Of a DNA stretch of 64,000 bases, positions 34,820 through 64,000 are shown piece by piece. A model generated the notes under the pieces. That model was not told the origin of the DNA, did no database searches, and saw nothing but the letters and a program-made list of their open reading frames with translations. This DNA comes from Octopus bimaculoides. Lineage: Eukaryota. The position numbers and the translations under genes are program-made. The DNA lies in the NCBI RefSeq assembly GCF_001194135.2, contig NC_068982.1, forward strand, positions 167,335,984-167,399,983, given 5' to 3'. The stretch's first letter is position 1; each line of letters begins with the position of its first letter.

Positions 34820-34872
<53 letters not shown>

Positions 34873-37064: not shown

Positions 37065-37125
37065 AAGCTTGTTTCCCAACCACATGGTTCTGGGTTCAGT
37101 CCCATTGCATGACACCTTGGGCAAT

Positions 37126-38381: not shown

Positions 38382-38391
38382 AAAAAATATA

Positions 38392-40942: not shown

Positions 40943-41059
40943 ATATAGTCCATCTGTCTTTCTTGGTTAAAAATAGAAATCTGCATAACTGAATACCTTT
41001 GCCACTTTATCCATTATTGGTAAATTACATTGTTTTCTATCAACAAAACAACCTTGTGT

Positions 41060-43088: not shown

Positions 43089-44918
43089 ATTTATATCTTG
43101 GGGTCTCATTATTCTGAGTCGTCCTTCATACATGTAAAGTTGAACATGTTTTTGAGTTCATGGTTTATGGTGATTACATATATTGATAATGCTTGATTGC
43201 CTTCATGGATGATCTTACGTTGTGTTGATGCCCCAGGCGAAGAAGTAGGATCTCCCAAGACATAAATAGAAGTAGTCTGGTCGTGGTAGGTGTGGTTGAG
43301 TAGCAGTTGTGTAGCGGTTGAGTAGAGATCATCCGAAGGTACTAGATAGCAGTAGCTTGAGACATAACATGTTATTAGGCTAGGACAAAACTTAATGGTT
43401 TCTAGTTTTGGGAGGTACTGTTGGAAACGTGTATATATATGTGGGGTGTGTATGTGTGTGTGCATGTGTGTGTGCGAGCGCACATGCAAGCATGGTTGTG
43501 TTGTGATTCTTTTTCAATTGAAGGGTTTTGATGTTCTGGAGAAGACACTTTAGTTGTATAGAGAGTATGACAGCTCTTCTAGTGTTGATACCTTGATAGA
43601 ATGTACCCAGTATATTTTCTAAAGTGGCTGATGTCAGGAAGGGCACCTAGCTATAGAAACCATGCCTAAAGTGGAATGTATGTGCGAGACATGGTCTACC
43701 AGTCCATCAAAGTGAGCTGTAACTAGAAATAAGAATTGAATCAAACCATGATGATGTGTCTAACCCATGCTTACGTAGAAAATGATGATGACCATTGTTA
43801 TCAAGATTTTCAGCACCATCATAATCATGATGATTTCCGACATTTTGAATCTCATTATTATCTTTAAATATCACCATCATTTTTACCTTTGTTAGTATCA
43901 TAACATCGAGCCATTGTAATTTCATGCTATCATCAACCGAATGCCACCATTAACTTCCCATTCTTTGAAGAATACTCTTTTTAGTGCAAAGATACAGTGC
44001 AATTCAGTGGGTGTTGTTAGATTTTGACATGCAGCTCATTATCATAATTCTTTATTGTTCTAAAAGTAACCCCCCTCCCCCGCAAAAAAAAAAAAGAAAA
44101 ACATGTTGCAGTTAGATTATTTGCTTTTAAACTTTCATCAACATGATAATTGTTAACACAATTATGATTATCACTTATGCTTTCACCATCATCTTCAGCA
44201 TCTTTATCAATACCTTTCTCAAAAACTAGTTGAGAATGATGATGTACAGTCTTCAGTGATTTGGAACATGAATAAACAAAAGTTACAGAATGATAGAAAA
44301 CATTTTGGCAATCTCTTTCCTCAAGTAAGAGTGAGAAGAAAGAAATTGCTAAATTCTTAATTTAATTCCTGTTGTTGTCTGGCCCCAGGATGGTTTCGAG
44401 CCTACAATCATATGCATTCCAACCTTGACCGCCTAGATTTTTTTTCAGGCATAGCAGCAGTATCTACTTCTATATTATTAATGTGTCTTTCCTTTTCTAA
44501 GATGCTAAGATGCAATTTGGTTGCTTTTCATAACAGGCTGTGTAATTATGTAGAGGCTCCCTAAGTGGCTTATGTTAAACTCCTGTTGATAATAATGGTG
44601 ATGATAGTAATAATAATGGAGTAGATGGTAATAATTATAATGATGAAGATCCTGCTAAGCTTTAAAGTGAACTAGCAACTGAGTGGGCTTTAGTTCCTAA
44701 GAATCTTTAACAATCATTAGGAATTAGGAACTTTTCACTTTTGACTGTTGTAGTAGTACACTTAGTCTTAGTAGTTTCAGTTTTCATTATTGTTGTTGTG
44801 GAGGAGTTAAATTACTGTCAGTGTTTGGTTAGGCTATGTGATTGCAAAATAGATTGAATTGCTTTTCAGAGAAGTTCTCTATATGATAGCAAGCAGTGTT
44901 ATATTTCAGTAAAACTGA

Positions 44919-44974
<56 letters not shown>

Positions 44975-47900
44975 CTTGTAATTGTGGTATAGTGTTAACC
45001 ATAGTCTGTGATGCAGCCTAGAGCCATTTTAAGCAATATATTTTTGAAACCTCAACAGCAAGTAAACATTAAGATGCTTGAATATTAGTTTACTTATGTC
45101 AATAGATACAACCAGTCTGCAAAAATGAAACCCGATGACCTGGAATTGTTTGTTTTTTGGTTATTCTTATTGTATCTGCTGTTGTTATTGCTTTTATTAT
45201 GATTTTCAATTCTTTATGTAATAACATCTCTAATTGTTGAAATTACAAGAGTATACTGTCCACTAAATTCACTTTAATAATCATATTTGTTCAAGACCTT
45301 GCTCCCATATTACCACTACTGTTATTATTACTCTAACTACTACTACTACTGGTCTTTTCATATTGTTATTGTTGATATTGTTGTTCCATTCAACCAAGCT
45401 CCAAGTTTTATTGTATTTTATCAATTATCAGCAAGTATATAATGGTATTTTAATCTATTGCAATTATATTGATTTTCCCCCCATTCTCCTATGTATATCT
45501 CTTTCTCTTCTCATGTTAGCTATTGTGTATATTTTTCTGTTTCCAACTCATTAGAAAGACAAAGCATCATTCTATTACTCATGATAATACTCTGAGGCTA
45601 TATTTTAATTTTATTTTGGTTTCTGCTGCCAACAGCTTCCTGCTGACCTTTGCATAGCTTTTCACTGACCCCAAAAATATTTCCATTGATTTCATTGCAA
45701 TTTTTCAGTTAGATTGGTTTTGCAAGTGTGGGTTGGGTCAGGTTAGTGGAGAGTGAGTAGATGGTGTGTAATATGAAGAATATAGAAAGAAAGGTTAATT
45801 GATAACTTCTCTCTACATAGAAATATTTTACCAGAGTTAATAAAAATCGATATTCTAGGAAGTTAGTTGATCAGAGAACAGCTGTGTTTATGAAAACATA
45901 AGTGCTGTTTGAAATTGTATTCATATATCTATAAATTTCTTTTCCTCAACATCTAAAGCATTTTCATAAAGCTCAACCTCAAAGAAAATGTCTTTCTAAC
46001 TTAATTCCTGATCTTAATATATACTAAACATCCTTATATAATGACCTGTAAATATTCTGTTTCTTAATTGTTCTAATTAAATTTTGTTTCAAGTTTGAAA
46101 TGATTAACTAACAATAAAGCAATTTATTTTCATAATGAATTAACACTTGCTCATACTGAAACAAAATATTAGAAAAATAAAAGGCCACAATTATATTTTA
46201 CCCTTTTCTCTCTGAACAAACATTTGTAATAAAAATTGATATTCAGTTCACAGTGTATTGCATAAGAAATACATAGATACACGATAAATAACTGTGAATT
46301 TTGAAAATGTGAAAGAACTGCAGTATTTATAAAGCATTGTAAAGTCAAAGTAATTCTCAGTGAACTGAGTTTACAAACCAGTTTCAATTCCTGGCTGGAG
46401 TTGTGTAACTTCATTTGTATTATCAATACTGTTAGAAAATCTTTATCAACACCTGTGTTGCTATGCCTTAAATTCATAAGTTTCATTCCTATGAAATTGG
46501 CTGTAGCCATTAGTTTGGTGAGGTTCTGTCTGTTGCACTAAAAGAAAATGATGTTTTCAGTGTTGTGCCAATATTTCAATGAATTACAGGACATTTTTCC
46601 ACAGTGGTTACAGGGAAATGAACCACATACTAGATGTATTGTGGAAATTTGGTCAGCAGACTGAATCTAAATGAATTGTGTATGTTTATAATTAAGATGA
46701 GGAGAACTTTGATTTGGCACAGTTTCTAGGTCACAGGAAGTAGTGAGTTCAAATATGGATAGGAAATGAGATCATATAAATTGGGAATTGACCACAAGAA
46801 AAGGCAATTGCATTATGGTTCTTTTTTTAAAATTTGTATTTTGATGCTCAACACACATTCATGTTTCTTTATAGTGACTACATATAGCCATCACAAACAA
46901 GCATGTAAATTTGCATTTAGATACATGATTTTGATTGGTTGGACTATAAACCTCATCTCTACAGACGAAAAACAGTTTAGTATCTGAACAAAATTGTAAT
47001 CAGTTTGATCTCTAATCATCATTAGACATCTTATTTCTGGATTGTACATAGTACTAGGCTAAATTTCAATGCATAACATTTATTTCTAAACTAAGAGTAA
47101 TAACATTCCCATTCATTAGGCCACTGACACATTGGCAATTAATGAATCATTTCTAGGTTATTTAGATTCATTTTTCACTTATTGAGTTTAAGTCTACCTT
47201 GGTTTCTGATTACAGTAACAGTAGCTTTACACCTACTATTTCTTTGATCTTTTTTTTTAAAGTTTTCACCATAGTTAATTATTAATTATGGAAATTTCAT
47301 TCAGTTGTAGTGTGTTTCCATTTTTTTTTTTTTTGCACCATATGTGTTCAATTATTCTTCACTGAAATATTTCTCCTCTTGTTAAGGCTTTTCTTATGTT
47401 CCCCTAATCTTTAGAGACTTCTCATGAAAACATTTTTCATATCTAATGTGATTGTAATAGTCTGAAAAATATTTGTAATACCAGTAACTTATCTAAGACA
47501 TTTAGGCATTGCAAACGTGCTGTAGGGTTGGGTTAAGTAGGAGAAGGGATTTCTTGTGCCTTTTATCACTTAACATCAAATAATTTACTAACAAAATGAG
47601 AACTTTTTTTTTAAACCCATAAATTAAAGCCATATTTCTTCATTATTGAATACTTCAGTATTTTTTTTTAAAGACAAAAAAGAAAGCTTTCTGCAGCTAA
47701 GATAATGGAAATACAAATTTCCAGAATTTAAATTTTGTTTTATAAAACTGTTTTAGAGGTATTTATTTTTTAAATTGCTATGCATCCTTTTAAGGGGTTT
47801 TGAAATAGAGATACTCATCTGAATTTATCCAACAAATATAAGAAACTGGATATTTTTTCTTTTAAATTTCAATTATTTGAAAGGATTGGTAATTAAATTC

Positions 47901-48058
47901 AACTGGATTGATTCAAAAGCACAATTCATATGCCAATGTCAGGATTTCAACACCTGAGATTTCAGTCATTATTTCAGTACTATATTATTGTTCATAAAAC
48001 ATTTTTACTCTTTTATTTTTGTTTTTAATCTGTTGCCGTTGAGATTTCTTAATGTCTT

Positions 48059-48455
48059 GGACGGCTGTGTGGTAAGTAGCTTGCTTACCAACCACATGGT
48101 CCCGGGTTCAGTCCCACTGCGTGGCATCTTGGGCAAGTGTCTTCTACTATAGCCTCGGGCCGACCAATGCCTTGTGAGTGGATTTGGTAGACAGAAACTG
48201 AAAGAAGCCTGTTGTATATATGTATATATATATATGTATGTGAGTATGTGTTTGTATGTCTGTGTTTGTCCCCCCAACATCGCTTGACAACCGATGCTGG
48301 TGTGTTTATGTCCCTGTAACTTAGCGGTTCAGCAAAAGAGACCGAAAGAATAAGTACTAGGCTTCCAAAGAATAAGTCCTGGGGTCGATTTGCTCGACTA
48401 AAGGCGGTGCTCCAGCATGGCCACAGTCAAAAGACTGAAACAAGTAAAAGAGTAA
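48059..48455 (+). mobile_element. Near full-length SINE family A, ending ~107 nt upstream of the exon 48562 acceptor
   Basis: ggctgtgtggtaagtagcttgcttaccaaccacatggtcccgggttcagtccc...gactgaaacaagtaaaagagtaaa. Confidence 0.93.
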
Positions 48456-48561
48456 ACAGGCGTGTTTGATTTAGTATCCTTCTGAAGCATTATTGGAACT
48501 AATTATTCAATGGATTGCTCTTTAGCATGATGTAATCATTATTATTTTATTTCTGTTGTAG

Positions 48562-48695
48562 GAAACCAAGAGCCATTACAGAACCATCACTAAGACCAGG
48601 AAATTTATCAAGGATGGTGTTATGGTGACAAGCACCACTTCGAAGGTTATAGCAATGGGAGAAGAAAACAAAGTTAAAGATGACCATTTTCTCAG
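48562..48695 (+). CDS. SLK: SLK-like exon starting the C-terminal domain: ETKSHYRTITKTRKFIKDGVMVTSTTSKVIAMGEENKVKDDHFL(R); 134 nt, phase 0 to phase 2
   Basis: Acceptor ttttatttctgttgtag and donor gtaagt. Matches the SLK/STK10 motif TLKKTRKF.VDGVEVSVTTSKI...FLR. Confidence 0.95.
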
Positions 48696-51000
48696 GTAAG
48701 TTATTCTGAGTTTTTCTTTTTTTTATAATCTAGCTTATTGTGACTGTTGTAGTTTTGTTGGTGGTAGTGATTGCTATGATTGTTTTGATGATGGTATATG
48801 TTATTTTTTTCTAATGGCTTAGTTGATGGAGAAAATCCAGTGTCATGCACTTTTGTAGGATCTCCAAGTCTAATGGAGGGGAAGGAAAGACAAAAATGCT
48901 ACACATTGTTTGCTGCTAATCATTACTTTAATACCTTTTTGTAACAGTTGAAAACTGGTGCCTGCAATTGGGGGTCACCTGCAGATATGGCAGCTTCTCA
49001 AAGAACTATGTAAAGATGCTGGTCCCTAGGCTTAGGCTTCTGCGGGTGGTGGGGTGACTTTTGTATTTACTCTATAACAAGCACTTTCACTACCATAATG
49101 AAGGTGCTGTAGGAAGCAGCTTATCAAGATATCTAGTTATCTTCAGACTAGAGTTCAGGTCTGAATACTTGCAACAGAGTGGACTCTACTAAATGCACCC
49201 AAGGGCTAAGTGATAGGGTTAAACCAAGTCATGGATTACCCATAGCTTCTAGCAGACAAAAAAAATGAAACACATACACAAGATGGACGAATATAGTCAA
49301 TAACAATCAAAAAACAAGTTATTAATTTTATTGAGAAATCAATAAGAAACAAACCAATTAATCTAGCAATTCTGCTTTGCATGTGTGGTTTTGTGGTTGT
49401 TATGAGCCATGGTTGCTAAGAGCCTTCTAAGATTACTGAGCCATTTTGATAGTCTCCCTCAAGACACAATAGTATATGCCCCCTACTTTTTTGTTTTTAC
49501 ATTTCAGCTCAAAATATATTTTAATATTTTCAGTATTTTCCTTGTTTCTTTTGCTGCATACAATGGTACTGATAACAGGCAAGAAAATTCTCTGACACTT
49601 GTTCTTACTGTTATTGTTAGCATTGTTATTGTTTAGCCACAGGTCAGCTCTGATCCAGAAAATCTATGACGAGGAATGTTCCAGCTATGACACTCCTCAT
49701 CCATCTATTCAGATGGTGTATCTTGGGTCACATCATCAAATGTGTCCTTCCTCTTTCAAGACAGCTGGGTATGTGATATGAAGGAGATTTGATGGTAGTT
49801 TTTAGCAGTGTAAAGGCTTGTTTTTATTTTTTAGTGTTATTACTGCTGCTTGATAATCTAGGGTGTGGTTAGTGTCAGATAAAAACCAGAGAAAAAGTTT
49901 TATGGGTTGGTGAAGGGATTGTGAAGAGCAGGGGTGAAGTGATGGGGTGGTAGGGTTTACTGACATCAAACAATGTAAGGGGAGATGAAAGTTTTTTTTT
50001 ATTGATTTTTCAACTAAATAAATATCTTTTTTGTTTGTTATTGACTATATATTCAGTATGTGTAGTTTTATGTTTGTATTTTAATGTGTGTATATACTTG
50101 TGTGATTTAGCATTTTATAGTGATATCAGATTGTGAGTTTGTATGTGTGTACATACACATATGGTTGTATGTCTGGAGTGACCTGTGCAAATATGTGCTG
50201 TGTGCCTGTCTGTCTGTCCTGCATTTCCATTTTTATCACTTTTCCTCATTAACATAGAAATAGATTGTTTTCTGAAGCCTGATATTATTTCACAGATGTG
50301 TTTAGCCAATAATGTGTTAGTTGATTTCTGATGTTATTTTGTTATTTTCAGCATTAGCTGAATGAATTCCTCTCTTTTAAAATCTCTGCATCAACCACCT
50401 GGTATACAATATTATCAAAAATAATAGGTTTTACTGGTCAGTACAGAAATTTCGATTTGAAATTCCTAATAATAGGAGTTAATAGGAGCTTCAAGCAAAT
50501 TGTATGTCTATCCTGGAAGGATGACAAATAAATCAACATTAGTCGAACTTGATCATAGAACTCTGGTACACTCATCTAGACACAAGTATAACATTTAGTT
50601 AAGCATTCAACTGCCTTAAACTTTGATAATAATAATTTCTGGTCATTAGAACTCATCATTGGTTCAATGCCAATATTGAAGGGGAGCTGTATCATCAGTT
50701 GATGAAATCTGGTGTAATTTTGGTTTGACCAGGAATAAATGGAAAGCGAAGTAGATATTGACATACTTTGAACTCATTGTAGCAAGTCATAAAAATAACT
50801 ATTATCTCACCTATTTATGCTACCCTAATAATAAAGGTTATGATTATGATGATGATGATGGTAATTGATAATATTTCAAAAAAATTTATTGGCTGGTCTG
50901 GAGGAAGGGGTTAAGCAGGAAAAACGTTTGCAGTGGAAGAAATTCCAGAATTATGGTATTCTAGGATTGAAGGGGATGGTTGTAGAGATTAGTGTGGAAA

Positions 51001-51003
<3 letters not shown>

Positions 51004-51088
<85 letters not shown>
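51004..51088. repeat. Compound (GT)n(GA)n microsatellite, representative of dozens of di- and trinucleotide repeats in the window
   Basis: Read directly. Others include (CCA)n ~857-890, (GT)n 14828-14868, (GTA)n ~44926-44973, (GA)n ~59744-59782 and (TA)n flanking several gaps. Confidence 0.97.
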
Positions 51089-51089
<1 letters not shown>

Positions 51090-51399
51090 ATGAATTTGAG
51101 TGAAAATTTGCGGATTTGAAGTGCCTGAGTGGAAGACAACTGTGTGTGTAACAGCAGCACCATCCTAGATGTAAGAGTAGTACTCCTATTATTGTTCCTA
51201 CCCAAGTTTTGCAAAGGTTTTGCACATATTCTGTGATAAAAGGATCAGAAGAATGAAGTGTTCGAGATTGCTTGGCATTATTTTAGAGAGAATCCATATG
51301 TTGTTGGGGTGATGTGTATGGAATGATAATAGCATTCTTTCTCTTACTGATGTCAGAAAGAAAGAGGCATGGATGTGCTACAATGAGAGGCTGTTGAAT

Positions 51400-52060
51400 G
51401 TGCAGATTGTATGGGGGGTGGTGAGAGCCTATTCATGTAGACCCAGAAGAGGAACCAGCTATCCAAGTTGACAACAGTATGGTAAATTGAGGAAGTAAGG
51501 ATATGAAAACAGGAAAGCAGCTGGTCAGGGACAACTGTAGAATTATTTAGCTCAGAGTAAGTTCCTACACGTAGCATTCATCAACCTGGAAAAGGGCTTT
51601 GGTTGGGCCTTTCCCTCTGATTTGGTGATTACTAATGGAAACTAGGCTTGAAGAATGATTTGACAACAAAGGGCTTCTCCCTCTGAGTGAGAGACAGATT
51701 GTACAATGATTTCTTGCAAAGTGCAATGCTGCATGGTAAGCGAGACATGGGCCTTGACTGCAGAAGATTTGCAAAGACTAGTAAGAAATGAAGTGAGTAT
51801 ACATTGCTTGATGAGTAAAATTAGTGTGCATGAATAATGAAGTACTATAAGCTGAGAGAGAAGCTGTTTATGAGAGGAATTATTGTAGTAGGTGAGAAAG
51901 GAAATTGTGATTATACAGACATATGATGTTTATAGGGAGGGTGACAGCTGCATGCTCAAAGTGAATGGAACTTGTAGAAGATGGAGACAGAGGAGGACAT
52001 GGGACAAAATGTTGAAGACTGATTGCAAGATGTATTGTACTAAGGAAATGACAAAGGATT
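51400..52060 (+). mobile_element. Old RTE-LINE relic collapsed by several large internal deletions
   Basis: Consecutive pieces resemble EGPAIQ.D...MKTGKA, QL.E.YLA..K.L..AF..LEK, KLG.EE, KG.SL....RLY..F..SAMLHG.ETWA.TAED and EGTC.R.R...TWDK. Confidence 0.65.
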
Positions 52061-52195
52061 GTAATGCTTAACAATACAGTGTCAGAGAAAACCCATTCAT
52101 TTGTGTGAATATGGCAAAACATACAATAAAATGGGGCTAGTGATGGAGATTGGGTTCATAACATACACACACACACACACGCGTGCGCGTGCACT

Positions 52196-52422
52196 GCGAG
52201 CTGGCAGAAACGTTAGCACGCCGGGCGAAATGCTTAGCAGTATTATGTCTGCCGCTACGTTCTGAGTTCAAATTCAGCTGAGGTCGACTTTGCCTTTCAT
52301 CCTTTCGGGGTCGATTAAATAAGTACCATTTACACAATGGGGTCAATATAATCGACTTAATCCGTTTGTCTGTCCTTGTTTGTCTCCTCTGTGTGTAGCC
52401 CCTTGTAGGTAGTAAAGAAATA
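52196..52422 (+). mobile_element. SINE family B copy
   Basis: gcgagctggcagaaacgttagcacgccgggcgaaatgcttagc...gttctgagttcaaattc...agccccttgtaggtagtaaagaaataa. Confidence 0.92.
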
Positions 52423-53229
52423 ACACACACATGCACACATGCACGCATGCACATGTGAGTCTTTTACCCTATTCTTGTTAAATCTCCATCTACTGTTCCT
52501 ATTGCCTATTCAAACCACAACTAGCTAAGAAAGTTAAAACAAGAACAAATAACAAATTATCTTTGATTCACGCCTGAGGCTGAGTTGTAATGCAGTCAAA
52601 AGTTGGAGGTCAGTATGTTTTGAAGCAGTAGAAAATCACACCATGTAAATATAAACTGTATTGCAGTTATCATATCTGATATCATGTTTGGCAAAATTCT
52701 ACTGTGTGCTTTCTTGTTCTTTCTAACATAAAGTAATAATGAAAAAAGTTCTCTCTCTTTTTCTCACTCTCAACACTGATTTATGTCCGTTTATTATGAA
52801 AGACCTCACAACTTGACAAGAGATGTATTTCTGAACTGTAGTAATTTACTGCTGAATAGTTATGACTAGGAAACTCATTATGTTTTTAACTCTGGTTTCC
52901 TTAACCAGTTTTATTTTCTAAAATCTACTTTTGATTGAGTATCTTCAAACGATACATTTCTATCTTTTATGTAAATCTAAGGTTAGGCTGGCTTTGCTTG
53001 TTAGATTTTTTTCTTTCTTTTAAGTAGATTATCAAAAGTCAAGCTTGTTGGGCTAGCTACAGAAATTGTTAATATTATAAAGTTAACAGGCTGTTCATGC
53101 CATTAAAATGATTTGCTTCAGTAAATTTATCTGAAACTTTCCATTAATTGATCTCATTTTGAACAAAACATTTCAATGCAGCAATACTGAGCCAGAACAT
53201 GATTTTAGATGATGTATTATTTATTTATT

Positions 53230-53264
<35 letters not shown>

Positions 53265-54039
53265 AGGTGAGTAGAGAAGAGTATGAATTTCTTCATCCAT
53301 TTGGTTCATTGGGGCAGTGTATGTAATCATGAAAGGGTCTAACCCTCATGTTGGTAAGATTTGAATTTAGCACTGAAAATTACGAAACACCACAGATTTA
53401 TGCCTTTCTTTCCCCTCTCCTACTTCGTGCTAAGTTTTACATACTTATTGGTTCCTTCTTACAGGTAAGTGAACTGGACCATTTGGAAATAATTTGAGTC
53501 ATTGTTACATTGATGTAATATAAACTGTTGTTCTGGTTAGTAGTCTAGAACCTTGTTAGGTTGGCCATCAGACCTTTTTAGAACAATGTGCAAAGGATCA
53601 AGTGCAGATTTTAAAAAAATGTTTTTGTGTATTTTTTTAGTTTGAGGAAGGAAAGTTGTACCTATGTCCATTTAGCTTCTGTTAGAGAGAGGATTTTAAA
53701 ATGACTTTTAAAATAGCTTTTGTCAGTTATCCGCATTCTGTAGTATGAGAGGCAATGAGAAAGCTTGTTATAGATGACTAGCTTTTGAGAGCTGAGTATT
53801 ATTTTTGAGGATTTTGAATGAAGTATATATATATTGTTAATGAAGAATTTTTGGTGTACACATAAGTATCCACCCAGGTGCTATGCCTTGTTGCTTTGGC
53901 AAATTGAATTTCTTTGGGAATATCTTATATGCTGATGACGGGTTTCTCAGGTTATCATGAAGAACTGAAAAAGCTGGAAGAGTTGGTTTTGAATCCAGTG
54001 GATAAATCCTTTAACTGCAAAATTAAATTTCATGCAGCC

Positions 54040-54230
54040 CTGTACTGGTGACACATAAAAGGCACCCATGACACTCTCGGAGTAGTTGGCGTTAGAAAGG
54101 GCATCCAGCTGTAGAAGCCAAGCCCAAATCAGACTGGAGCCTGGTACAGCTCTCTGGCTTACCAGTTCCAGTCAAACCGTCTAACCCATGCCAGCATGGA
54201 AAATAGACACTAAATGAGGATGATGATTCC
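54040..54230 (+). mobile_element. RTE-LINE 3' tail fragment, preceded by a degraded ILYADD RT scrap at ~53915-53990
   Basis: ggcacccatgacactctcggagtagttggcgttagaaagggcatccagctgtag...catggaaaatagacactaaatgaggatgatgat; tatcttatatgctgatgac upstream. Confidence 0.75.
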
Positions 54231-56428
54231 AATAATGATAAATTTCTACCAAGAAAATAGAATTGGTATTTTTTGCTAGTCACATTGCCTCAATAAACTT
54301 AACATCTCAGCAAAAAACAATTTCAAACATGAAATACTTCAACAAAAGATAGATTGGAATATAAAACTGCTTTCTGCTGTTAATGGTAATGCAATTTTGA
54401 GTGAATATATAATTTCCACAGTAAAAGGGGTTAAAGGTGAATTTATATCTGTGACATACAGTAGAAAGGCTTCTGAACATCCAAGGTTAAGGACACTTTT
54501 GGTTTGGCACCTTATCATAATTAGTGGAGATGAAAGACTAGAGAAAGTTTTGCAGCCTTTCACACCTGCTCCCAAAAATGACTCCTTTGTCCTCACCTGT
54601 CAGCTTCCACTCCATTGCCAGCTCTTACCCCAGAACCTACCCCCAGCTCCCACCTCTCATCTCTGTTTACCTTCATTTCCTCTCATCTTACTATGTTTCT
54701 TCTTTAAAGTAGGGGGGGCACCCATCAATGACAGACATCACACAAAAAAAACAAAACAAAAAAAAACTAATAGTGTAAATCGAATGTCCTTACCTGATAT
54801 GTGGAGAGTTGACAAGAATTTTAATGAAAACAGTTAGACCTTAAACAGAGCATCAGCACATTAAAGTATTCAACGAAATCTCTCTATATGTTACTGGAGA
54901 AGTTAACTGCATGAGTAACCATTAGCCATATACTGCTTAGTAGACCATGGATTACTCAGATGATTCACTAAGTATTGTTACCTAGGTGACATATTTAATG
55001 CTGGAGGTAGGAGTGATTGTTGCTTGGTGTTAATGATTCATGAGTGATGGAAGTGGTTTAGGGCTTATTACCGATATTGCCAATATTTTTTGTAAACAAA
55101 GGTATCTGAGTTAAAGAAATTGAAGGAGTGAGAAGCTATTTGGCAGTGAAGAAAAAATAATGAATCTAGAAGATCTGCAGAAATTAGAGAAAAATTAGCT
55201 GATTGTAGACTGATGGACGTGCAAGTAAGTTAAACTGAATTGCAATTAAAAATGTGTGAGATGGCCACTTTAGGGGAACATTTATTAAGGCAAGCAAATG
55301 ACAATTGATAGATGGAAGAAAACAAACAAAAATTAGAGATATATAAAGAAATCATTTCTTAGATGTAAAGTAAGAAAGATCTGGGATGAACTAGACTGAG
55401 AAATGTTGATTTTACAGATGACCTGGCACACGATTATGATGTGTAGAAAGGTGACTTACCTTATTTGTGATAGTATAGGGAAATAGATGTTAAAATGATA
55501 ATAGTGATGATAACAGCAGCAGTGATGTTGGGTTTTAAAAATGGACAAAGAATAAGAAAATAAATGTGAAAGAAGATGAAAAAAATTAAAAAAGTAAAGC
55601 AACTTTATTTCTTGGAAAAATGTATTTATAGATCATTTCTTGAAAGCAGCCCAAAAAGCTAATTTTAGAGTTAATTAGATTAATTCACAAACAATATCAT
55701 TTTTTAGTATTTTTATTTTAAATATAAAGATGTTAGTCTTCATGTTTCAGTCCTATTGAGTAGGCCACTTGTAAAGTCATTCAACTGTGAGTATAGACTG
55801 AGGGAATAGATGATGGAAGTGGTAGGAGTGGTGGTTACTATTTGCCTGCACATCTCTGTCTCTCTCTCTAGCTGTCTGTTTCACTGATTTTGTCAGCTTG
55901 TCTATTTGTTTTTATTGTCTATATATTCCCCTACATGTGTTTGTATATCTTTGTATCTGATTCTATCAGTCATAATGTTTCTGATAGAACATGAATTGTC
56001 AGTTTCTTGGCTGATTCAACATATAAGGCTGCTCTGGTACTTTATAGTTAGTTATTCTAGTATGGTGGCACTGCTTTAGGTCCAAGTGTTTGCAACATGA
56101 AATCACATTTTGAATAGAATGCAAATTGCTATCCCAAATTGTCTGAGGTACAGTTCTCAAGGATAAGTTCTCCATAGAAGTTTCAGATCTCAAGCCAAAT
56201 CCAATTGAAGCCATTCTGCCACTTCAACTCAAATTGCAACATTGAACTTCCATGACCATAATATAATCGTTATGACAACATGTGTGCTGCTTTTGTGGTT
56301 TCAAAAGTCTTTTGATGTTATTGCCTCAGTGACAGTTTGGTCATTTCCAATAGAGTTGTGTCATTATGCTGAAATAGCTTTTAATTTTTAAAATCATTGT
56401 TCTGAAATCAGTGTTCTTTAAACGACTT

Positions 56429-56468
<40 letters not shown>

Positions 56469-57014
56469 TGTGTGCATATATGTTAGGAGATAATGAATTT
56501 ACCACTGCTTTGATATTTGTTTAAATTGTTTCTGTACCTCTTTGTTTTTAAATACATTGCATGTAAATGATTCTGTGTGAAAAGTTATGTAATATGTGTG
56601 ATTGAATATGTTGGAGCAGTTCTTCATCAGATTGGCATTACACTGTGCCTCTTTGCCTTGTGTGAAGAATATGCATTTGGTGTTGTTTATATAAAAAGGA
56701 AACAACAATGATTATAAAAAAAAAAAAGCTATGAGAAAGATAAAAATAACAACAATTCCAACCTTAATAAAACTAATAGTTGTGGTACAAAAGGCTTTGA
56801 TAAAACACGGGACAGTAATAAATCACAAATGTAAGTAGTGGCCAATGTAGAAAATATTATGGGGTGGGGGAGTGCACAATAATGATAATAAAATTTAAAA
56901 TAAGAATATGTACAAAAATTAAGTTAAAAAAGAATAAGAATAATAAAAGAAAATCTTTTCAATTACCATAACTGGTAAACGAGCAGTTAGTAAAAAAACA
57001 AGTTTTGGGTAATT

Positions 57015-57505
57015 TTGATGATGATAATCCTTTCTTCTATAGAGACAAAGCCTGAAATTTTGGGGAATGGGAATTAGTTGATTACATTGATCCTGGTGGT
57101 CAACTGGTTCTTATTTTATTAACCCTGAAAGGCAGTTGACCATGGCAGAATTTGAACTTAGAACAAAAAGACGGACACATTGTTCAGTGTGCTAATGATT
57201 CTGCCAGCTTGCTGCCTTAATAATAATGATATTAATAATAATAATAATAATAATAATGATGATAAACATAGTATTAATATTGGTTTCAAATTTTTGCACA
57301 AGGCCAGCAATTTTGAGGGAGTGGACGTGTTGATTACATCAATTCCAGTACTCAACTGGTGCTTATTTTATAGACCCCCCCCCCTCCCCAAGATTGAAGG
57401 CAAAGTTGACCATGGCAGAATTTGAACTCCGAACATAAAGATGGACGAAATGCTGCTAAGCATTTTACCTGGCATGCTAATGATTCTGTCAGCATGCTGC
57501 CACCT
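57015..57505 (-). mobile_element. Two head-to-tail SINE B copies separated by (AAT)n
   Basis: Two units ...caactggt(t/g)cttatttt...gaccatggcagaatttgaact...gctaatgattctg(c/t)cagc at ~57020-57215 and ~57270-57500; (AAT)n at 57218-57263. Confidence 0.8.
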
Positions 57506-57922
57506 TCAATATAATGCTAACATTAGGAAATAAATGCTAATAATAATGACAATGATGATGATGATTATAGTGGTTATAATGGTGATATGAAAAGAATAAA
57601 CAAACACTAGAGTGAAAACAATCAGTTGGAGTGTAGGTGTGTGATGGGTAAAGAGAAAAGTTAGTGGCAATAAAATTCTAGGGCAAACTATAGAGGAATG
57701 TAGTGGTGATAATGATAAAATATAATCAAATTAATGTGGACAGTTGTTGTTTGACATTCATTGCACTGGAGCATCATAAAGTGGATTGGCAGAGGATAGA
57801 CACTGACATCAAAATGTATCAGTCAAGCGCATATGTTGAGTAATGAAAGCAGGAGGATAATTATAAAAATTAAAAGGTAGAGATGTAAAAAAGTAAAACT
57901 AAAATAAATAAATATATATATA

Positions 57923-58328
57923 GGCGCAGGAGTGGCTGTGTGGTAAGTAGCTTGCTTACCAACCACATGGTTCTGGGTTCAGTCCCACTGCATGGCACTT
58001 TGGGCAAGTGTCTCCTACTATAGCCTCGGGCCGATCAAAGCCTTGTGAGTGGATTTGGTAGACGGTAACTGAAAGAAGCCCAATCGTATATATGTATATA
58101 TATATGTGTATATGTGTGTATTGGTTTGTGTGTCTGTCTTTGTCCCCCCAGCATCGCTTGACAACCGATGGTGGTGCATTTACGTCCCTGTAACTTAGCG
58201 GTTCGGCAAAAGAGACCGATAGAATAAATTCTAGGCTTCCAAAGAATAAGTCTTGGGGTCGATTTGTTTGACTAAAGGTGGTGCTCTAGCATGGCTGCAG
58301 TCAAATGACTGAAACAAGTAAAAGAGAG
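57923..58328 (+). mobile_element. Full-length SINE family A (tRNA-type head, CORE-like ttgggcaagtg segment, microsatellite middle)
   Basis: ggcgcaggagtggctgtgtggtaagtagcttgcttaccaaccacatggttctgggttcagtccc...gactgaaacaagtaaaagag. Confidence 0.94.
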
Positions 58329-59339
58329 TATATATGTATATATGGGAGAATATACAAATAATAACAAGACGAGGACAGGTGGTGTGTATATATATATATA
58401 TATATATATATGTAAATATATATATATGTATGTATATATATATATATATAACGTTGACCACTAACGTGGACATTCAATGTGCTAGAAATAGATCACATCT
58501 TGTGTCTATTAAGACCTAAATTGTTCGGCGGTGGGCAACTATGTNNNNNNNNNNNNNNNNNNNNNNNNNNNNNNNNNNNNNNNNNNNNNNNNNNNNNNNN
58601 NNNNNNNNNNNNNNNNNNNNNNNNNNNNNNNNNNNNNNNNNNNNNNNNNNTATATATATATATATATATGTAAATATATATATATGTATGTATGTTATAC
58701 ACATGCTCACACATGTACCCATACACACACACACGGTTATCATTATCTTCATCTTTGTTAGTTACTGTTCTAACAAGGTTGAACATTATAAGGGTAGGTT
58801 AGTCGTATTTCATATAAGAATTGACTTTCTATTTAGTTAGAGAGAATTGTCACCACCACCACCATCATTATTAATCCTCCCACCATCATGTTTTGCACTT
58901 AAAGAAATCTGATGTAGTCTTATTAGCTTTCACTATGCCAGTTACTTCATTGATTTTGGCTGAATATTTTGAGTAAAGTTGAAGTTGATATGCTAACTGG
59001 GACCAGGTTAGTGAGGTTAAATCTATAAGCATTGACCATAGTACATTTATATTGTTGGCAGCTGATCTCTTGCTGAGCCATATTTACACTTTAAGATTAA
59101 TTAATGAAAAAAAAAAAATCAATTGTTTGCCTTAGCTAAGTTGTGTGTGTGTGTGCATGCATACATGCACGTGCGTGTGTGTTAATTGAAAGTAAGAATA
59201 CAGTTTCACCAAAATGCCTGAAGGTGACTGATGAAAATTCTTCATATTAAGTCAGTATCTGAGGTCACAAAAGTCTAGTTGTTACAGGGAAATTCCTTTG
59301 CTCAGCTTGTAGAGTATAAAGAAGTAAGAATTTAATATT

Positions 59340-59620
59340 TCATAGTCTGTGTAAGCATTTAGTGCATGAAGGTTCTGTGAGGTTTCTGGCAAGAAATCAA
59401 GCATCAAAGAATGTACTAGGTACACTAGACTAGCTTAAAACTGCATGAGAGCAAGTATGACTTACTGATATGGATCAACTGAAGTTGTTGTTTTGGATAC
59501 TTCAGTTGAATTGTAAATGTTAGTAGTGGTGCTTATGGCGGGAGAAGCAGTATAGTTTTTAGGGAGAAGAAAAGTTTTGGAGAATTGCTACCCATGGAAG
59601 TAGTGAAAGGCACATTGATG
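59340..59620 (+). mobile_element. Very old RTE-LINE relic (PHD end and RT domain 7 region)
   Basis: tgtaagcatttagtgcatgaaggttctgtg resembles CKL.VH..C; gaagttgttg...tac resembles EVV..F.YL; ttttggagaattgctaccc resembles FRELLP. Confidence 0.5.
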
Positions 59621-59740
59621 TTGTCGTGTGCAAGAAATTGGATGCCATTTGTTTAGAGATTTGGATGGCAAATATAGAGTATCTTCTAATGACTGGGTGG
59701 AATGTTGTGTCATTTATGTTTGGTAGAGAATATTAATCTA

Positions 59741-59785
<45 letters not shown>

Positions 59786-60468
59786 GTATTTTGGGAAATC
59801 ACTAGGTATCAGTTGCTGATAGAGGTATGATAGACTGGACATTGGCTGATAGAAGACTGGACATGTCATATGCATTGATGGAGCATGCTGAGGGATAAAG
59901 AACATTGTGTGTGTGTAAGAGAGAAAGAGAGAGAAAATAGATGTGTGGATGTGTGAATATATATATGTATGTAAATTTATGTAGATGAATAGGTGTGTAT
60001 GTATGTGTGCTAGTCTATGTTTGTTCACCTAATTTAATGGAATTTTATAAAGGAACTGTGTTTGTGTGTGTGTGTGTGTTTAAAAACTATATAACTATGT
60101 AAAATGTGGTGGAACCACTTAGTTCAATTAATTAGAACATTGTTTGTAGTTACTCTTCACCTTCATATTCACTATATTTTGTTGTTGCATTTTTAATATA
60201 TATATTTTTTGTACTCACTGTCATGCTGATCAGATAGCTGTACATATCTTGCTTGTTTTTTAATATTTTTCTTGTATTTTCTCTGATTTTTCTTTTAATT
60301 TTTCAATCATCAGTTAAAAAAAATGCCTACTTCTCTTTCTTTCACTTTCTTTTATCACTTATGTCACAACTAAAATATATTTCTCTTGATAAAAATGTAA
60401 ATTTACAATGGTATTAATAGAAGAAATATGCATGTATGTATGCACAGCATGCATGCATGCGTGTGTGT

Positions 60469-60528
<60 letters not shown>

Positions 60529-60544
60529 AAGATCATTATAGTTT

Positions 60545-60880
60545 CCATGTTTGCATGAATCAGACTGGCCTTCTCCAACACAGCATCTGACCACTTGTTA
60601 GGGTCTGTTGTCCTCTACTTTGTGTGGTTCAGTCACTTGAGATTTATCTTCACTTCCTATATTTTCCTTGGTCTTCCACTTACGCAAGTTCTTTCCATTT
60701 GGATCACTTGGTACTTTCTTACCCAACTGTTATCCTCCATATATATCACATGTTCAAACCTGCTCTGGCTTCTCTCTTGCATAATACATTTCTTGTACAT
60801 CCAGATTTCTCTTGTATCCAGTTTTTCTCTCAGCTCAATTTTATTCCATTGTTCATGCTCACTAACTTAATACATCCAGC
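60545..60880 (-). mobile_element. Degraded RTE-LINE ORF2 C-terminus
   Basis: Minus strand reads MLCWMY.VSEHEQ...ELREKL...FEHVIYMEDNSWVRK....MERTC.SGRPRK. Confidence 0.7.
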
Positions 60881-60937
60881 AGAGCATACAAACGAAATGA
60901 GGACAAATATCCACAATATTCGTCAAATGTAAATAAT

Positions 60938-61040
60938 CATCATCATCATCATCATCATTTAACGTCCGCTTTCCATGCTAGCATGGGTTGGACGACTTGA
61001 CTGAGGACTGGTGAAACCGGATGGCAACACCAGGCTCCAT
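60938..61040 (-). mobile_element. RTE-LINE 3' tail fragment
   Basis: (CAT)n ttaacgtccgctttccatgctagcatgggttggacgacttgactgaggactggtgaaaccggatggcaacaccaggctcca. Confidence 0.88.
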
Positions 61041-61171
61041 ATTTTTCTTAACATTTACTGAGTATTAATTGAAACAGCTGTAAGGGATGAGGATTAATTT
61101 ACTGTTAATAATAAACAATTGTTAATTTCCCAGTCTCCATTTTCTTTTTCATCTTTTATACGAATATAAAC

Positions 61172-61218
<47 letters not shown>

Positions 61219-61313
61219 NNNNNNNNNNNNNNNNNNNNNNNNNNNNNNNNNNNNNNNNNNNNNNNNNNNNNNNNNNNNNNNNNNNNNNNNNNNNNNNNNN
61301 NNNNNNNNNNNNN

Positions 61314-61353
<40 letters not shown>

Positions 61354-61604
61354 ACATATACATACACACATACACACACACACATATACACACACAAACA
61401 GTGGGGTACATGTGTATGTTTGTAATCTCACTCAGCTCTGAAATTCTGGAACCTATCCTGCTAATATTATTTACTTGCTAAGTATTATCCAAAATAATTC
61501 TTCTGTAGTGGTCATATTCTTGTGAGTTTTCTATTTTTGTTCAATAGTTTTGATGTCTTTTATTTATATCAAGCATCTAAGAACTGCCTTGCGAAAAACC
61601 TTGC

Positions 61605-61644
<40 letters not shown>

Positions 61645-61939
61645 CAGATTTAGGGTTCTGTCAATGTGGAAAGCAGGGATGGTTTGTCTAAATGACTCAT
61701 AACACAAACATGCCAATCACTGCTACATCTAATGCAAAAATGAAAGCAAAAAAACACAACAAACAAACAAAAACCACAAAAAAAAACAAAAAAAAACAAA
61801 CAAATAGAACCCCCTCTAGATTGTATTCATCTTCTTAATGCTTGTTTTTTGTAGTAGGGTTTCCCCACCCTCATTCGTTTTGACCCCTATTTATGCAACT
61901 TTTTTTTTATTTTGCTCTTGCTAAAAGTAATTACTTAAC

Positions 61940-62220
61940 AAACCACTGCATCCACCACCACCATTTATCATTATTGGCTTCACCCTCGTTACCACCAACA
62001 TGACTATCACCCTTTACAATCACAGCTATCACATTATCTCCACCACCACCACCACCACCACCACCATTGTTATCATTATCCCCACTGTTATCATTGGCTA
62101 TTATATTTACCATTATAACCATAATCATCATGACTGCTGTTGCTATTACCTTTTCCACTCTCAGAATTATCACCTTCACCACCATTACTACCTCTATCAT
62201 CATTACTGTTATCACTGGCT
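61940..62220. repeat. CAC/CAT-rich low-complexity tract
   Basis: Runs of accaccacc and atcatc; these generate the spurious ORFs at 61931-62267. Confidence 0.85.
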
Positions 62221-64000
62221 CTCCCATTGATGAAAGATTCAAAGTGATCAAACCAGACCCTGTTTAATTTGACATCCTTATTTAGTTGTGCTTAAGTTTA
62301 TTGATCCTCACCTCCGAAATCCAGTTAAAAGCTAAAACAACAAAGATACTTTTTTGTAGGGCAGGAGTCAGAGCATGACCAATATTTGTGAGTAGGGGAA
62401 GAGATAATATAAGGGTCAGTAGATCAAGTGTAAGCTGAAAAGATAGTGTATATATGAGTCAATTGGATCAGGTGAATCGTGAAGGGATATTGTTGGGGGT
62501 CAACCAGATTAGACGAAGAGTAATAATGTCAGGGTCACATAGATCAATGTTACTATTATTATTTTGTTGGTACAAGTTATAAAAAAAAGACCTAGCTGAT
62601 TCTTGTGGGAATTGAACTAACAGTAGTTAAGTAATAGTGGGTAAGGTTGTACCAACTTCACACCTAAGGAATTAATAGTCTATAACGCTCTCATGGATTA
62701 TAACCTGTTGCTACAGTGTTTAGTTTCAGAAATTGTTGCACACTTTGTACATGTGAGAGAGTGCAAGTGCATATTATTTGCATGTGTCTGTATGAACGTG
62801 TGATTATTGTAAATATGTAGACATGCATTTAAATAAACAGCTGCACATGCGCATCCATAGATGTGCACGTTAATAAAACTGCATTCAAATGTGAATACAT
62901 AAGTACACAAATATTCACTGTGCACACATGTGCATGCATGTGTGCATTGCATACACAATTAAATGCTCTTAACAATTCTCTGCATCACATAACCAAATGC
63001 TTGCATTTAGAAATGTAAACACGTGTAGATACACACCCGCTCTATTCTCTCACCTCTCTTCTACTTTCTTCTCTCTCTCACCTCGTGGTGAATGATCACA
63101 TTTTCATTATAATTAGTGTGTATTAGTAAGAGTGTTTAGAAAACATTAAGTGATGCGGTTTAAATTTCTCTTGTGAATGACTAATTAACATTTTTATTGG
63201 CTGTTTATTTAACATATTTATAATGATTTTATTGAACCTTACCTCCTCAAATGCACATAAGTCTGGTGTGAACAAACTCATAAACACATCACATGAGAAC
63301 ATACTGGATATAGTCAAACATATTTACTCTCGGTATAGCTGAAAGATATATATGCTTGTTTAGGTGTGTGGGAATGTATAAAATTAAGAGAAAATGTTCT
63401 CTCTCTCACCCTTATTTTTTTTTTATTAATAATCAACAGTAGTTATACTGTGATTCTAGGACTGAAAGTTTCGTGTGTTGGCACTTATTACCCCACCATC
63501 CTTATCTGTCTGTCTGTCTGCCTGCCTGCATATCTGCCTACCTGCCTGTTTATCTATCTATCTATCTATCTATCTGTCTATAGATAGATACATATTCACA
63601 TACACACACACACACATATATATATACATGCACATACATATATACACACACATATATNNNNNNNNNNNNNNNNNNNNNNNNNNNNNNNNNNNNNNNNNNN
63701 NNNNNNNNNNNNNNNNNNNNNNNNNNNNNNNNNNNNNNNNNNNNNNNNNNNNNNNNNNNNNNNNNNNNNNNNNNNNNNNNNNNNNNNNNNNNNNNNNNNN
63801 NNNNNNNNNNNNNNNNNNNNNNNNNNNNNNNNNNNNNNGAATTGTTGATACTGGTAAGTTCTCATGCTAGTCGAAGGAAAATGTGAGGTGAGGACATGAG
63901 GAGAAATCTGGGAATATTGGTTCCCAGATGATATGTTGTAGACTTGAGATATTGCCGACACATCTGACCCTGGCCATTATTGGAAAGCAAATATTAAGAT

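What the first reader, a model, noticed from the sequence alone, without database searches (positions are those of the whole stretch)
53405..53470. Candidate recursive-splicing ratchet point (zero-length exon): ...ttccttcttacAG|GTAAGT deep in the >15-kb last intron
Seen: 4.8 kb after the donor at 48696 the sense strand reads tgcctttctttcccctctcctacttcgtgctaagttttacatacttattggttccttcttacag|gtaagt. That is a pyrimidine tract, a branch-like CTAAG about 31 nt upstream, a CAG acceptor as strong as this gene's real ones (compare ttttcttttacag at 21947), and then a perfect GTAAGT donor, in sequence I cannot assign to a repeat. Established: this fused 3'/5' motif defines ratchet points used for stepwise removal of long introns in Drosophila and RS-exons in vertebrates. 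Inference: this kinase intron may be spliced recursively, which I do not know to be described in molluscs. Caveat: by a rough base-composition estimate, AGGTAAGT alone is expected about once per strand in 64 kb, so the case rests on the attached pyrimidine tract and branch site. A 30-nt in-frame microexon (53435-53464, SFTYLLVPSYR) is an alternative reading, but it would interrupt the conserved FLR.QEL motif.
Basis: partly seen in the sequence, partly recalled or inferred. Interest (0 to 1): 0.72.

Follow-up and report, generated by a model that had tools for sequence, protein, structure and literature searches.

The report
Lone splice-site look-alike in kinase intron
A perfect "acceptor-then-donor" splice motif really does sit 4.8 kb into a long intron of an SLK/STK10-like kinase gene. 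One such motif per window is close to what chance gives, and nothing available here shows that it is used, so it is most likely an ordinary decoy rather than a proven recursive-splicing site.

Summary
The sequence is exactly as described. On the + strand, 53403-53470 reads cctttctttcccctctcctacttcgtgCTAAGttttacatacttattggttccttcttaCAG|GTAAGT. It lies 4,769 nt after the donor of exon 48562-48695 of an SLK/STK10-like kinase gene. The next exon is not in the window, so the intron is longer than 15.3 kb.

It passes every motif-level criterion of a Drosophila-type ratchet point that I could test:
- an acceptor within the range of the gene's real ones;
- TT at -6/-5 and C at -3;
- a perfect 9-nt donor;
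- a branch-like CTAAG at about -31;
- a long host intron.

It also has the best composite score of the 367 AGGT sites in the window. These criteria discriminate weakly:
- 85 equally good pseudo-acceptors and 19 GTAAGT lie on the sense strand.
- The fused motif is expected 0.01-0.11 times per strand per 64 kb, which means hundreds to thousands of chance copies in a gigabase genome.
- The two other long introns of the gene carry no comparable site.
- In humans only about 0.2% of predictor-passing AGGT loci have RNA support.

RNA evidence and cross-species conservation are the defining tests, and neither could be reached.

The site is most likely a chance decoy (about 0.7). A real recursive site has a probability of about 0.15.

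The parts
48562..48695 (+). Upstream coding exon of the SLK/STK10-like kinase gene (ETKSHY...DDHFL, ends in phase 2 with AG)
   Evidence: Translation; tblastn alignment to a human SLK segment written from memory, E 2.5e-4; acceptor ttctgttgtag| and donor CAG|GTAAGT.
48696..48701 (+). Real 5' splice site GTAAGT that would be joined to the candidate site in a first recursive step
53403..53426 (+). Distal pyrimidine tract cctttctttcccctctcctacttc. It lies upstream of the CTAAG, so it would serve the AG at 53433-34 (microexon reading) rather than the CAG at 53462-64.
   Evidence: 13/16 Y for the 53435 acceptor.
53428..53430 (+). TGC (UGC) trinucleotide directly upstream of the AG at 53433-34. It is relevant only to the microexon rival.
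   Evidence: the UGC feature of eMIC-dependent exons is described in PMC8797185.
53430..53434 (+). CTAAG: a branch-point-like motif (CUAAY with G in the last place) with its branch A about 31-32 nt before the CAG. Alternatively, its AG is a weak AAG acceptor.
   Evidence: Fly ratchet-point branch points lie at -36 to -21 with a peak at -30 (10.1101/006163).
53435..53462 (+). Proximal pyrimidine-rich stretch ttttacatacttattggttccttcttac, with further YTNAY branch candidates (A at 53439 and 53447). TT at -6/-5 and C at -3 of the acceptor.
53463..53470 (+). AG|GTAAGT core: a candidate zero-length exon (acceptor AG 53463-64, donor GT 53465-66). After ligation to exon 48562-48695 the junction would read CTCAG|GTAAGT, the same 9-nt donor as the original.
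   Evidence: It has the top composite score of 367 AGGT sites on both strands: 11.0 bits against 7.6 for the next.
53465..53535 (+). Possible 71-nt cryptic RS-exon. It is out of frame, and a stop follows at once (AG+G TAA = R*).
53536..53541 (+). Weak downstream donor CTG|GTTAGT that could define the cryptic exon. Donors this good occur about every 485 nt, so its presence is near chance.

Best explanation
The site is most likely a chance juxtaposition, in unique AT-rich intron sequence, of one of the many pseudo-acceptors with a consensus donor hexamer. It has no selected role in processing this kinase pre-mRNA. Shown: the motif exists and is the best of its kind in the window. Inferred: it is normally ignored by the spliceosome, as are the other roughly 80 equally pyrimidine-rich YAG sites and 18 GTAAGT on the sense strand. 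If the acceptor were occasionally used, ligation would rebuild the same CAG|GTAAGT donor, and the rest of the intron would then be removed from there. Sporadic use would therefore leave no trace in the mRNA and cost nothing, which is also why such a motif need not be purged.
For: There are 85 sense-strand YAG sites with a tract at least as pyrimidine-rich as this one, of which about 6 are real acceptors, and 19 GTAAGT. The fused motif is expected 0.01-0.11 times per strand per 64 kb, which scales to roughly 10^2-10^3 or more chance copies per strand in a gigabase-scale genome. AGGTAAGT is as common antisense (3) as it is at intronic sense positions (3). GTAAGT shows no strand asymmetry (19 sense, 17 antisense). 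The other long introns of the same gene (more than 18.6 kb upstream of 18638, and 14.8 kb at 33715-48561) hold no comparable site; the only other sense AG|GTAAGT there, at 40743, has a poor tract. The putative RS-exon donor is no better than what occurs every ~485 nt. External calibration: only 6% of fly introns above 11 kb are recursive (10.1101/006163). In human brain, 3,022 of 1.67 million predictor-passing AGGT loci (0.18%) had RNA support (10.64898/2026.09.10.750672).
Against: The site is an outlier within the window, 3.4 bits above the best antisense site, and it is the only hit of the strict motif on either strand. It also meets fly-specific details that were not used to select it: TT at -6/-5, a CUAA-type motif near -31, and a first segment of 4.8 kb, which is inside the 2.6-63.6 kb range. 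It lies in sequence with no in-window repeat copies. Under a fly-like prior for ratchet-point density, the posterior for function would be much higher.
Confidence: 0.7

Rival explanations
1. It is a genuine intronic ratchet point (recursive splice site). U2AF and U2 recognise the branch at CTAAG (or CTTAT) and the CAG at 53462-64, possibly helped by exon definition through the weak donor at 53536. Exon 48562-48695 is ligated to 53465, removing the first 4,769 nt as a lariat. The rebuilt CTCAG|GTAAGT donor outcompetes GTTAGT and is then spliced to the next exon or the next ratchet point beyond the window. The mRNA is unchanged.
For: The juxtaposed acceptor and donor carry all the tested fly hallmarks (criteria). 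The host intron is longer than 15.3 kb. The candidate 71-nt cryptic exon is out of frame, and its donor (2.2 bits) is far weaker than the ratchet-point donor (9.2 bits), as in the donor-competition model. The motif is expected well under once per window by chance.
Against: There is no RNA or conservation evidence of any kind. The statistics are post hoc and marginal. The gene's other long introns have no such site. The downstream donor is at chance level. Motif-only predictions have a low yield in large genomes. Recursive splicing is not reported for any mollusc in the held literature.
Confidence: 0.15
2. It is a 30-nt alternative microexon, 53435-53464, spliced from the AAG at 53432-34 to the GTAAGT donor. 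It would insert SFTYLLVPSY between ...DDHFL and the R(K/R)QELREL segment of the kinase's coiled-coil region, possibly under neural (Srrm/eMIC-type) control.
For: The length is a multiple of 3 and the frame is open. A long UCUC-containing pyrimidine tract (53403-26) and a UGC (53428-30) sit directly upstream of that AG, and the donor is perfect. UGC and long CU-rich tracts are the described signature of eMIC-dependent microexons (PMC8797185).
Against: The acceptor is AAG, the least favoured purine context. The would-be exon is 73% pyrimidine and encodes a hydrophobic peptide in a charged coiled-coil segment. An open, in-frame 30-mer is expected by chance about one time in five. The AG-free zone is only about 37 nt and contains no CUAAY. 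No homologue with an insert at this point was seen, but no close relatives were available.
Confidence: 0.05
3. It is the acceptor of a poison exon or an alternative terminal exon. Use of the CAG without re-splicing includes 53465 onwards, giving ...DDHFLR-stop. The result is either an NMD target (71-nt exon) or a kinase truncated before its coiled-coil tail, ending at a downstream poly(A) signal.
For: A stop follows immediately in frame. ATTAAA at 54022 and AATAAA at 54292 lie 0.56-0.83 kb downstream.
Against: The perfect donor at the start of the exon should be re-used, as fly mutagenesis shows. Poly(A) hexamers are common in AT-rich DNA. There is no transcript evidence.
Confidence: 0.04

Closest known systems
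Drosophila intronic ratchet points (zero-nucleotide recursive splice sites; Hatton 1998, Burnette 2005, Duff 2015, Joseph 2018/2021, Pai 2018)
   Same: (Y)n-NCAG|GTAAGT architecture on the sense strand; TT at -6/-5; a branch-like motif near -30; a host intron above 11 kb; a first segment within the known range; a possible short out-of-frame cryptic exon with a weaker downstream donor.
   Different: There are no junction reads, saw-tooth, lariats or conservation, which are what define the fly sites. The animal is a different phylum with a much larger genome, so the chance background of the motif is orders of magnitude higher. The first segment (4.8 kb) is at the short end of the fly range (mean about 18 kb).
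Vertebrate recursive splice sites / RS-exons (Sibley 2015; Blazquez 2018; Bass & Salzberg 2026 preprint)
   Same: An AGGT core with an upstream pyrimidine tract inside a long intron of a protein-coding gene. The exon-definition model needs a downstream donor, and a weak candidate exists at +71.
   Different: Vertebrate sites are defined from total RNA data. Only a tiny fraction of motif matches are used (0.18% of predictor-passing loci). No such data exist here.
Pseudo-exons / decoy splice sites of long introns
   Same: An isolated good acceptor and a good donor deep in an intron with no coding potential around them, among many similar pseudo-sites (85 acceptor-like sites and 19 GTAAGT on the sense strand).
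   Different: Here the two decoys abut exactly, which happens rarely (expected 0.01-0.11 per strand-window).
eMIC/Srrm-dependent neural microexons
   Same: A frame-preserving 30-nt segment, UGC next to the acceptor, a long CU-rich tract, and a strong donor.
   Different: An AAG acceptor, pyrimidine-rich hydrophobic coding content, and no evidence of inclusion or conservation.

Membership tests
Intronic ratchet point / recursive splice site | [quoted passage not shown] | tested here: met
   CAG|GTAAGT at 53462-53470, 4,769 nt inside the intron that starts at 48696. No coding exon abuts it: a stop follows at once downstream, and only a 30-nt open segment lies upstream.
Intronic ratchet point / recursive splice site | Very strong acceptor: a prominent pyrimidine tract and TT at -6/-5 (99.5% of fly sites) | tested here: met
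   13/16 Y at -20..-5 (real acceptors of this gene: 12-16), TT at -6/-5, C at -3 (criterion). It falls in the lower half of the gene's real range, so it is not stronger than the real sites, as fly ratchet points tend to be.
Intronic ratchet point / recursive splice site | Regenerated donor strong enough to outcompete any downstream cryptic donor | tested here: met
   CAG|GTAAGT is the full 9-nt consensus, 9.2 bits against 2.2 bits for CTG|GTTAGT at 53536. The position weight matrix is my own rough one.
Intronic ratchet point / recursive splice site | Long host intron (flies: 11.3-132.7 kb) and excised segments of 2.6-63.6 kb | tested here: met
   The intron is longer than 15,305 nt and its end lies outside the window. 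The first segment is 4,769 nt (ranges).
Intronic ratchet point / recursive splice site | Branch point 21-36 nt upstream of the acceptor | tested here: inconclusive
   Motif level only: CTAAG with its branch A about 31-32 nt upstream, and YTNAY with A at -26 and -18. No lariat data.
Intronic ratchet point / recursive splice site | Short cryptic RS-exon (~50 nt) bounded by a downstream donor, usually out of frame | tested here: inconclusive
   A 71-nt out-of-frame candidate ends at GTTAGT (53536), but donors this good occur every ~485 nt on this strand (criterion).
Intronic ratchet point / recursive splice site | Motif occurrence above chance, with a sense-strand bias | tested here: inconclusive
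   1 sense against 0 antisense in the window; expected 0.01-0.11.
Intronic ratchet point / recursive splice site | Sequence conservation of the site in related species (fly sites are ultraconserved) | not testable with these tools
   No close relative is in the collections. The related contig L001 (56% aa identity in the large exon) does not reach the orthologous intron. An exact 21-mer and the exon peptide were absent from the metagenome contigs.
Intronic ratchet point / recursive splice site | Exon-to-site junction reads, saw-tooth intronic coverage, recursive lariats | not testable with these tools
   No RNA-seq access. No transcript-derived protein covering exon 48562-48695 was found in the database.
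eMIC-type neural microexon | Length of 51 nt or less, frame-preserving, open reading frame | tested here: met
   30 nt, reading SFTYLLVPSY(R).
eMIC-type neural microexon | UGC close to the acceptor and a long CU-rich pyrimidine tract | tested here: met
   UGC at 53428-30; tract 53403-26 containing CTCTCC (criterion).
eMIC-type neural microexon | Long AG-exclusion zone with a strong CUAAY branch site upstream | tested here: not met
   The nearest upstream AG is at 53394-95, leaving a zone of about 37 nt. That zone has no CUAAY; the nearest CTAAC (53339-43) is separated from the acceptor by several AGs.
eMIC-type neural microexon | Inclusion in (neural) transcripts and conservation of the exon | not testable with these tools
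   No transcript or orthologue data.
SLK/STK10 (STE20-like kinase) host gene | C-terminal half of a protein kinase domain followed by the TRKF..DG..V..TTSK...FLR segment that precedes the coiled-coil tail | tested here: met
   Pfam Pkinase E 9.7e-18 on the joined exons. tblastn alignment to human SLK, written from memory, at 45-69% identity per exon. The best database relatives are named STE20-like kinase or serine/threonine kinase 10.

The most novel reading that the evidence does not exclude
The site is a working ratchet point, and this SLK/STK10-like intron is removed stepwise. That would be the first recursive splice site documented in a mollusc (or any lophotrochozoan). It would imply that zero-length-exon recursion with the fly-type (Y)nTTNCAG|GTAAGT signature is an ancestral bilaterian way of handling long introns, used in the intron-rich genomes of cephalopods.
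Probability: 0.12. Interest if true: 0.5.

Novelty: not a real feature. Interest (0 to 1): 0.18.

Why it matters
If it were real, it would extend recursive splicing from insects and vertebrates to a third major animal lineage. It would also give a concrete locus for testing how large-genome invertebrates remove long introns. That would be a taxonomic extension of a known mechanism, not a new mechanism. As it stands, the value of the result is cautionary. A textbook-perfect ratchet motif, complete with fly-specific details, turns up at roughly the rate expected by chance in AT-rich, pyrimidine-skewed intron sequence. Motif reading alone therefore cannot nominate recursive sites in gigabase genomes.

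Tried and rejected
- **Repeat or transposon origin.** Self-BLAST of 53000-54000 and 51500-56500 against the window found only the (TG)n(AG)n microsatellite at 53231-53266 and flanking SINE-like copies at 52196-52423 and 54039-54227. Nothing covers the site. This says nothing about copies elsewhere in the genome.
- **Minus-strand U1 snRNA pseudogene.** ACTTACCTG is the U1 5' end, so I checked for one. Rfam gave no hit in the whole window, and the match does not extend beyond the 9 nt that any consensus donor gives.
- **A missed next exon in 48696-64000.** I found no QELREL-type open segment.
- **Orthologous intron.** The only related contig reachable (L001, ENA ERZ21867824, 69% nt and 56% aa identity in the large exon) has neither exon 48562-48695 nor alignable intron within its 10-kb flank. 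Walking further would have needed more protein searches than the cap allows, and would have stopped short of the site even with identical spacing, so I did not spend the last search.
- **Source contig or same-species transcripts.** The window's 270-aa ORF is not on record. Two protein searches that included the exon peptide returned nothing closer than 56-71% identity and nothing covering that exon.
- **Metagenome contigs.** An exact 21-mer across the site gave 0 hits, and the exon peptide had no confirmed relative.
- **Downstream donor as independent support.** A raw count of 7/9 consensus matches looked rare (1 per 1.5 kb). That count ignores the unfavourable T at +3. With a weight matrix, such donors occur every ~485 nt, so I dropped the argument.

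Full report
**What is there.** The AG is 53463-64 and the GT is 53465-66.

**The host gene.** It is on the + strand and is an SLK/STK10-like STE20 kinase.
- Exons at 18638-18714, 21948-22065, 25145-25226 and 26826-26948 encode the C-terminal half of a kinase domain. Pfam Pkinase scores E 9.7e-18. Per-exon identity to human SLK, which I wrote from memory, is 45-69%.
- The closest database proteins are named STE20-like kinase or serine/threonine kinase 10.
- Exons 31794-32213 and 32998-33714 encode a serine/acid-rich linker.
- Exon 48562-48695 encodes ETKSHYRTITKTRKFIKDGVMVTSTTSKVIAMGEENKVKDDHFL and ends in phase 2.
- The RQELREL-type exon that follows in SLK proteins is not in the remaining 15.3 kb. 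The intron is therefore longer than 15.3 kb, its true length is unknown, and it is not the gene's last intron.
- The gene has other long introns in the window: more than 18.6 kb upstream of 18638 (no kinase exon found there) and 14,847 nt at 33715-48561.

**How the site compares with real sites.**
- The acceptor has 13 of 16 pyrimidines at -20..-5, C at -3 and TT at -6/-5. Seven real acceptors of the gene have 12-16 of 16.
- The donor is the full 9-nt consensus and is identical to the real one at 48696.
- CTAAG places a branch-type A about 31-32 nt upstream, and two YTNAY motifs lie at -26 and -18.
In the recursive reading the working tract would be the 28-nt stretch 53435-62 (75% pyrimidine).

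**Is it more than chance?**
- AGGTAAGT occurs 7 times in the window against 2.4 in dinucleotide shuffles. The copies split 4 sense (one is the real donor) and 3 antisense, so the excess is not related to splicing. Only the copy at 53463 has a good tract; the others have 7-9 of 16.
- The strict fused motif (Y>=13/16, YAG|GTAAGT) occurs once on the sense strand and never on the antisense strand.
- Its expected number per strand per 64 kb is 0.008-0.015 in Markov simulations of order 1-5, or 0.01-0.045 with GTRAGT. An empirical product gives 0.11 (2,015 positions with such a tract x the observed 8-mer frequency). The product of 85 pseudo-acceptors and 19 GTAAGT per 64 kb gives 0.025.
- With a rough composite weight matrix of my own, the site ranks first of 367 AGGT sites on both strands, at 11.0 bits. 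The next best are an antisense site at 7.6 and the real acceptor at 21946 at 7.1.
- The site is therefore a real outlier in this window, at roughly the 1-in-10 to 1-in-100 level, with a threshold chosen after the fact. Scaled to a gigabase-size genome, the same rates predict hundreds to thousands of chance copies per strand.

**Further properties.**
- No in-window repeat covers the site. The flanking repeats are 52196-52423 and 54039-54227, and a (TG)n(AG)n microsatellite lies at 53231-66.
- Rfam finds nothing in the window.
- Downstream, the best donor-like site is CTG|GTTAGT at 53536. It would bound a 71-nt out-of-frame cryptic exon with an immediate stop. This fits the fly model, in which a short cryptic exon with a weaker donor defines the ratchet point (PMC8605326). 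However, donors this good occur every ~485 nt on this strand, so it adds little.
- The other long introns of the gene have no comparable site. The sense AG|GTAAGT at 40743 sits near the midpoint of the 14.8-kb intron but has a poor tract (8/16 Y, 1.3 bits).

**What could not be tested.** Ratchet points are defined by junction reads, saw-tooth coverage, lariats and strong conservation (10.1101/006163).
- The window's genome is not in the contig collection.
- Two protein searches that included the exon peptide found nothing closer than 56-71% identity and nothing covering exon 48562-48695.
- The one related contig (L001, 69% nt identity in the large exon) has neither that exon nor alignable intron within reach.
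- A 21-mer across the site and the exon peptide gave nothing in the metagenome contigs.

**Calibration from the literature.**
- In flies, 197 ratchet points lie in 130 introns of 11-133 kb. Only 6% of introns above 11 kb are recursive. 99.5% of the sites have TT at -6/-5, and branch points peak at -30.
- Fly recursive acceptors are stronger than ordinary ones (PMC6110457).
- In human brain, 1.67 million AGGT loci passed a splice-site predictor and 3,022 (0.18%) had robust RNA support (10.64898/2026.09.10.750672).
- Lungfish do not rely on ubiquitous recursion despite giant introns (10.1101/2024.12.11.627982).
- No paper in the held library describes recursive splicing in a cephalopod or any other mollusc. 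The three co-mentions are incidental.

**Weighing.** The probability that a motif match is functional equals the density of functional sites divided by the density of all matches.
- With a fly-like density of ratchet points, the posterior could reach 30-60%.
- With a vertebrate-like genome architecture, which long introns and a repeat-rich sequence suggest here, it is a few percent to about 10%.
- I put a real recursive site at about 0.15 and a chance decoy at about 0.7. The decoy may be used sporadically but is harmless, because its use rebuilds the same donor.

**Other readings.**
- **30-nt microexon (about 0.05).** This is the described signature of eMIC-dependent microexons (PMC8797185). 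Against it, the acceptor is AAG, the content is pyrimidine-rich and hydrophobic, and the AG-free zone is short.
- **Poison or terminal exon (about 0.04).** This reading would give ...DDHFLR-stop, with ATTAAA at 54022 and AATAAA at 54292 downstream.

**Verdict.** The interpretation cannot be decided with the data reachable here and is not favoured by the base rates. If true, it would be a new member of a known kind in a new phylum. As evidence stands, it is an isolated look-alike.

Noticed in passing
window 40743-40750 (+): A second sense-strand AG|GTAAGT lies 7,030 nt into the 14,847-nt intron 33715-48561, at 47% of its length. It is not an exon end, because stops occur in all frames just upstream. 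Its pyrimidine tract is poor (8/16 Y) and it has T at -3, so it scores only 1.3 bits.
   Followed up: partly
window, both strands: 10657, 23284, 35958, 40743, 48694, 53463, 55454: The 8-mer AGGTAAGT occurs 7 times against 2.4 expected from dinucleotide shuffles (none of 100 shuffles reached 7). The copies are split about evenly between strands, so the excess is compositional rather than splicing-related.
   Followed up: partly
window 54039-54227; also 1299-1447, 3648-3839, 5621-5755, 8196-8376, 12291-12469, 19591-19769, 34412-34577, 36252-36425: A SINE-like interspersed repeat of about 180 nt is present in at least 9 copies, in both orientations, at 77-85% identity. All copies lie inside introns of the kinase gene.
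   Followed up: partly
window 52196-52423; also 982-1109, 36837-37063, 37859-37970, 57397-57493: A second interspersed repeat family (up to 89% identity over 228 nt). It often sits next to TG/AG microsatellites and assembly gaps.
   Followed up: no
window 12850-14431 (-): Degraded retroelement ORFs lie on the antisense strand of the first long intron and are interrupted by a run of N. ORF 13998-14195 gives a sub-threshold reverse-transcriptase (RVT_1) match (21.8 bits, cut-off 29.6).
   Followed up: partly
window 26945-26954 (+): The exon 26826-26948 (HPFIKAF...DIKSIK) appears to end at a very weak donor, AAG|GTTCAC (-3.9 bits on my rough matrix). The true exon end, or possible alternative use, was not resolved.
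   Followed up: no
window 53428-53434 (+): UGC directly precedes the AG of CTAAG, behind a long CU-rich tract. This is the cis signature described for Srrm/eMIC-dependent microexons, and it fits the 30-nt in-frame reading 53435-53464.
   Followed up: partly
window 6525-6540 (-): An antisense look-alike of the candidate, ttggtatttcttacag|GTTAGTAA (7.1 bits). It shows that near-matches to the fused motif arise on the non-transcribed strand too.
   Followed up: no
L001 10001-10711 (ENA ERZ21867824, contig ctg122408l, 395 kb): A contig filed under a metagenome-type accession carries the orthologue of the large linker exon (56% aa, 69% nt identity). It evidently comes from another cephalopod-like genome. 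No other exon of the gene lies within 10 kb on either side, so its introns are at least as long as those here.
   Followed up: partly
window, several runs of N (e.g. ~13180-13480, ~28030-28390, ~37125-37760, ~38610-38770, ~58545-58650, ~61220-61320, ~63660-63840): There are many assembly gaps, usually flanked by microsatellites. Three of them fall inside the intron under study, so its sequence after 58.5 kb is incomplete.
   Followed up: no
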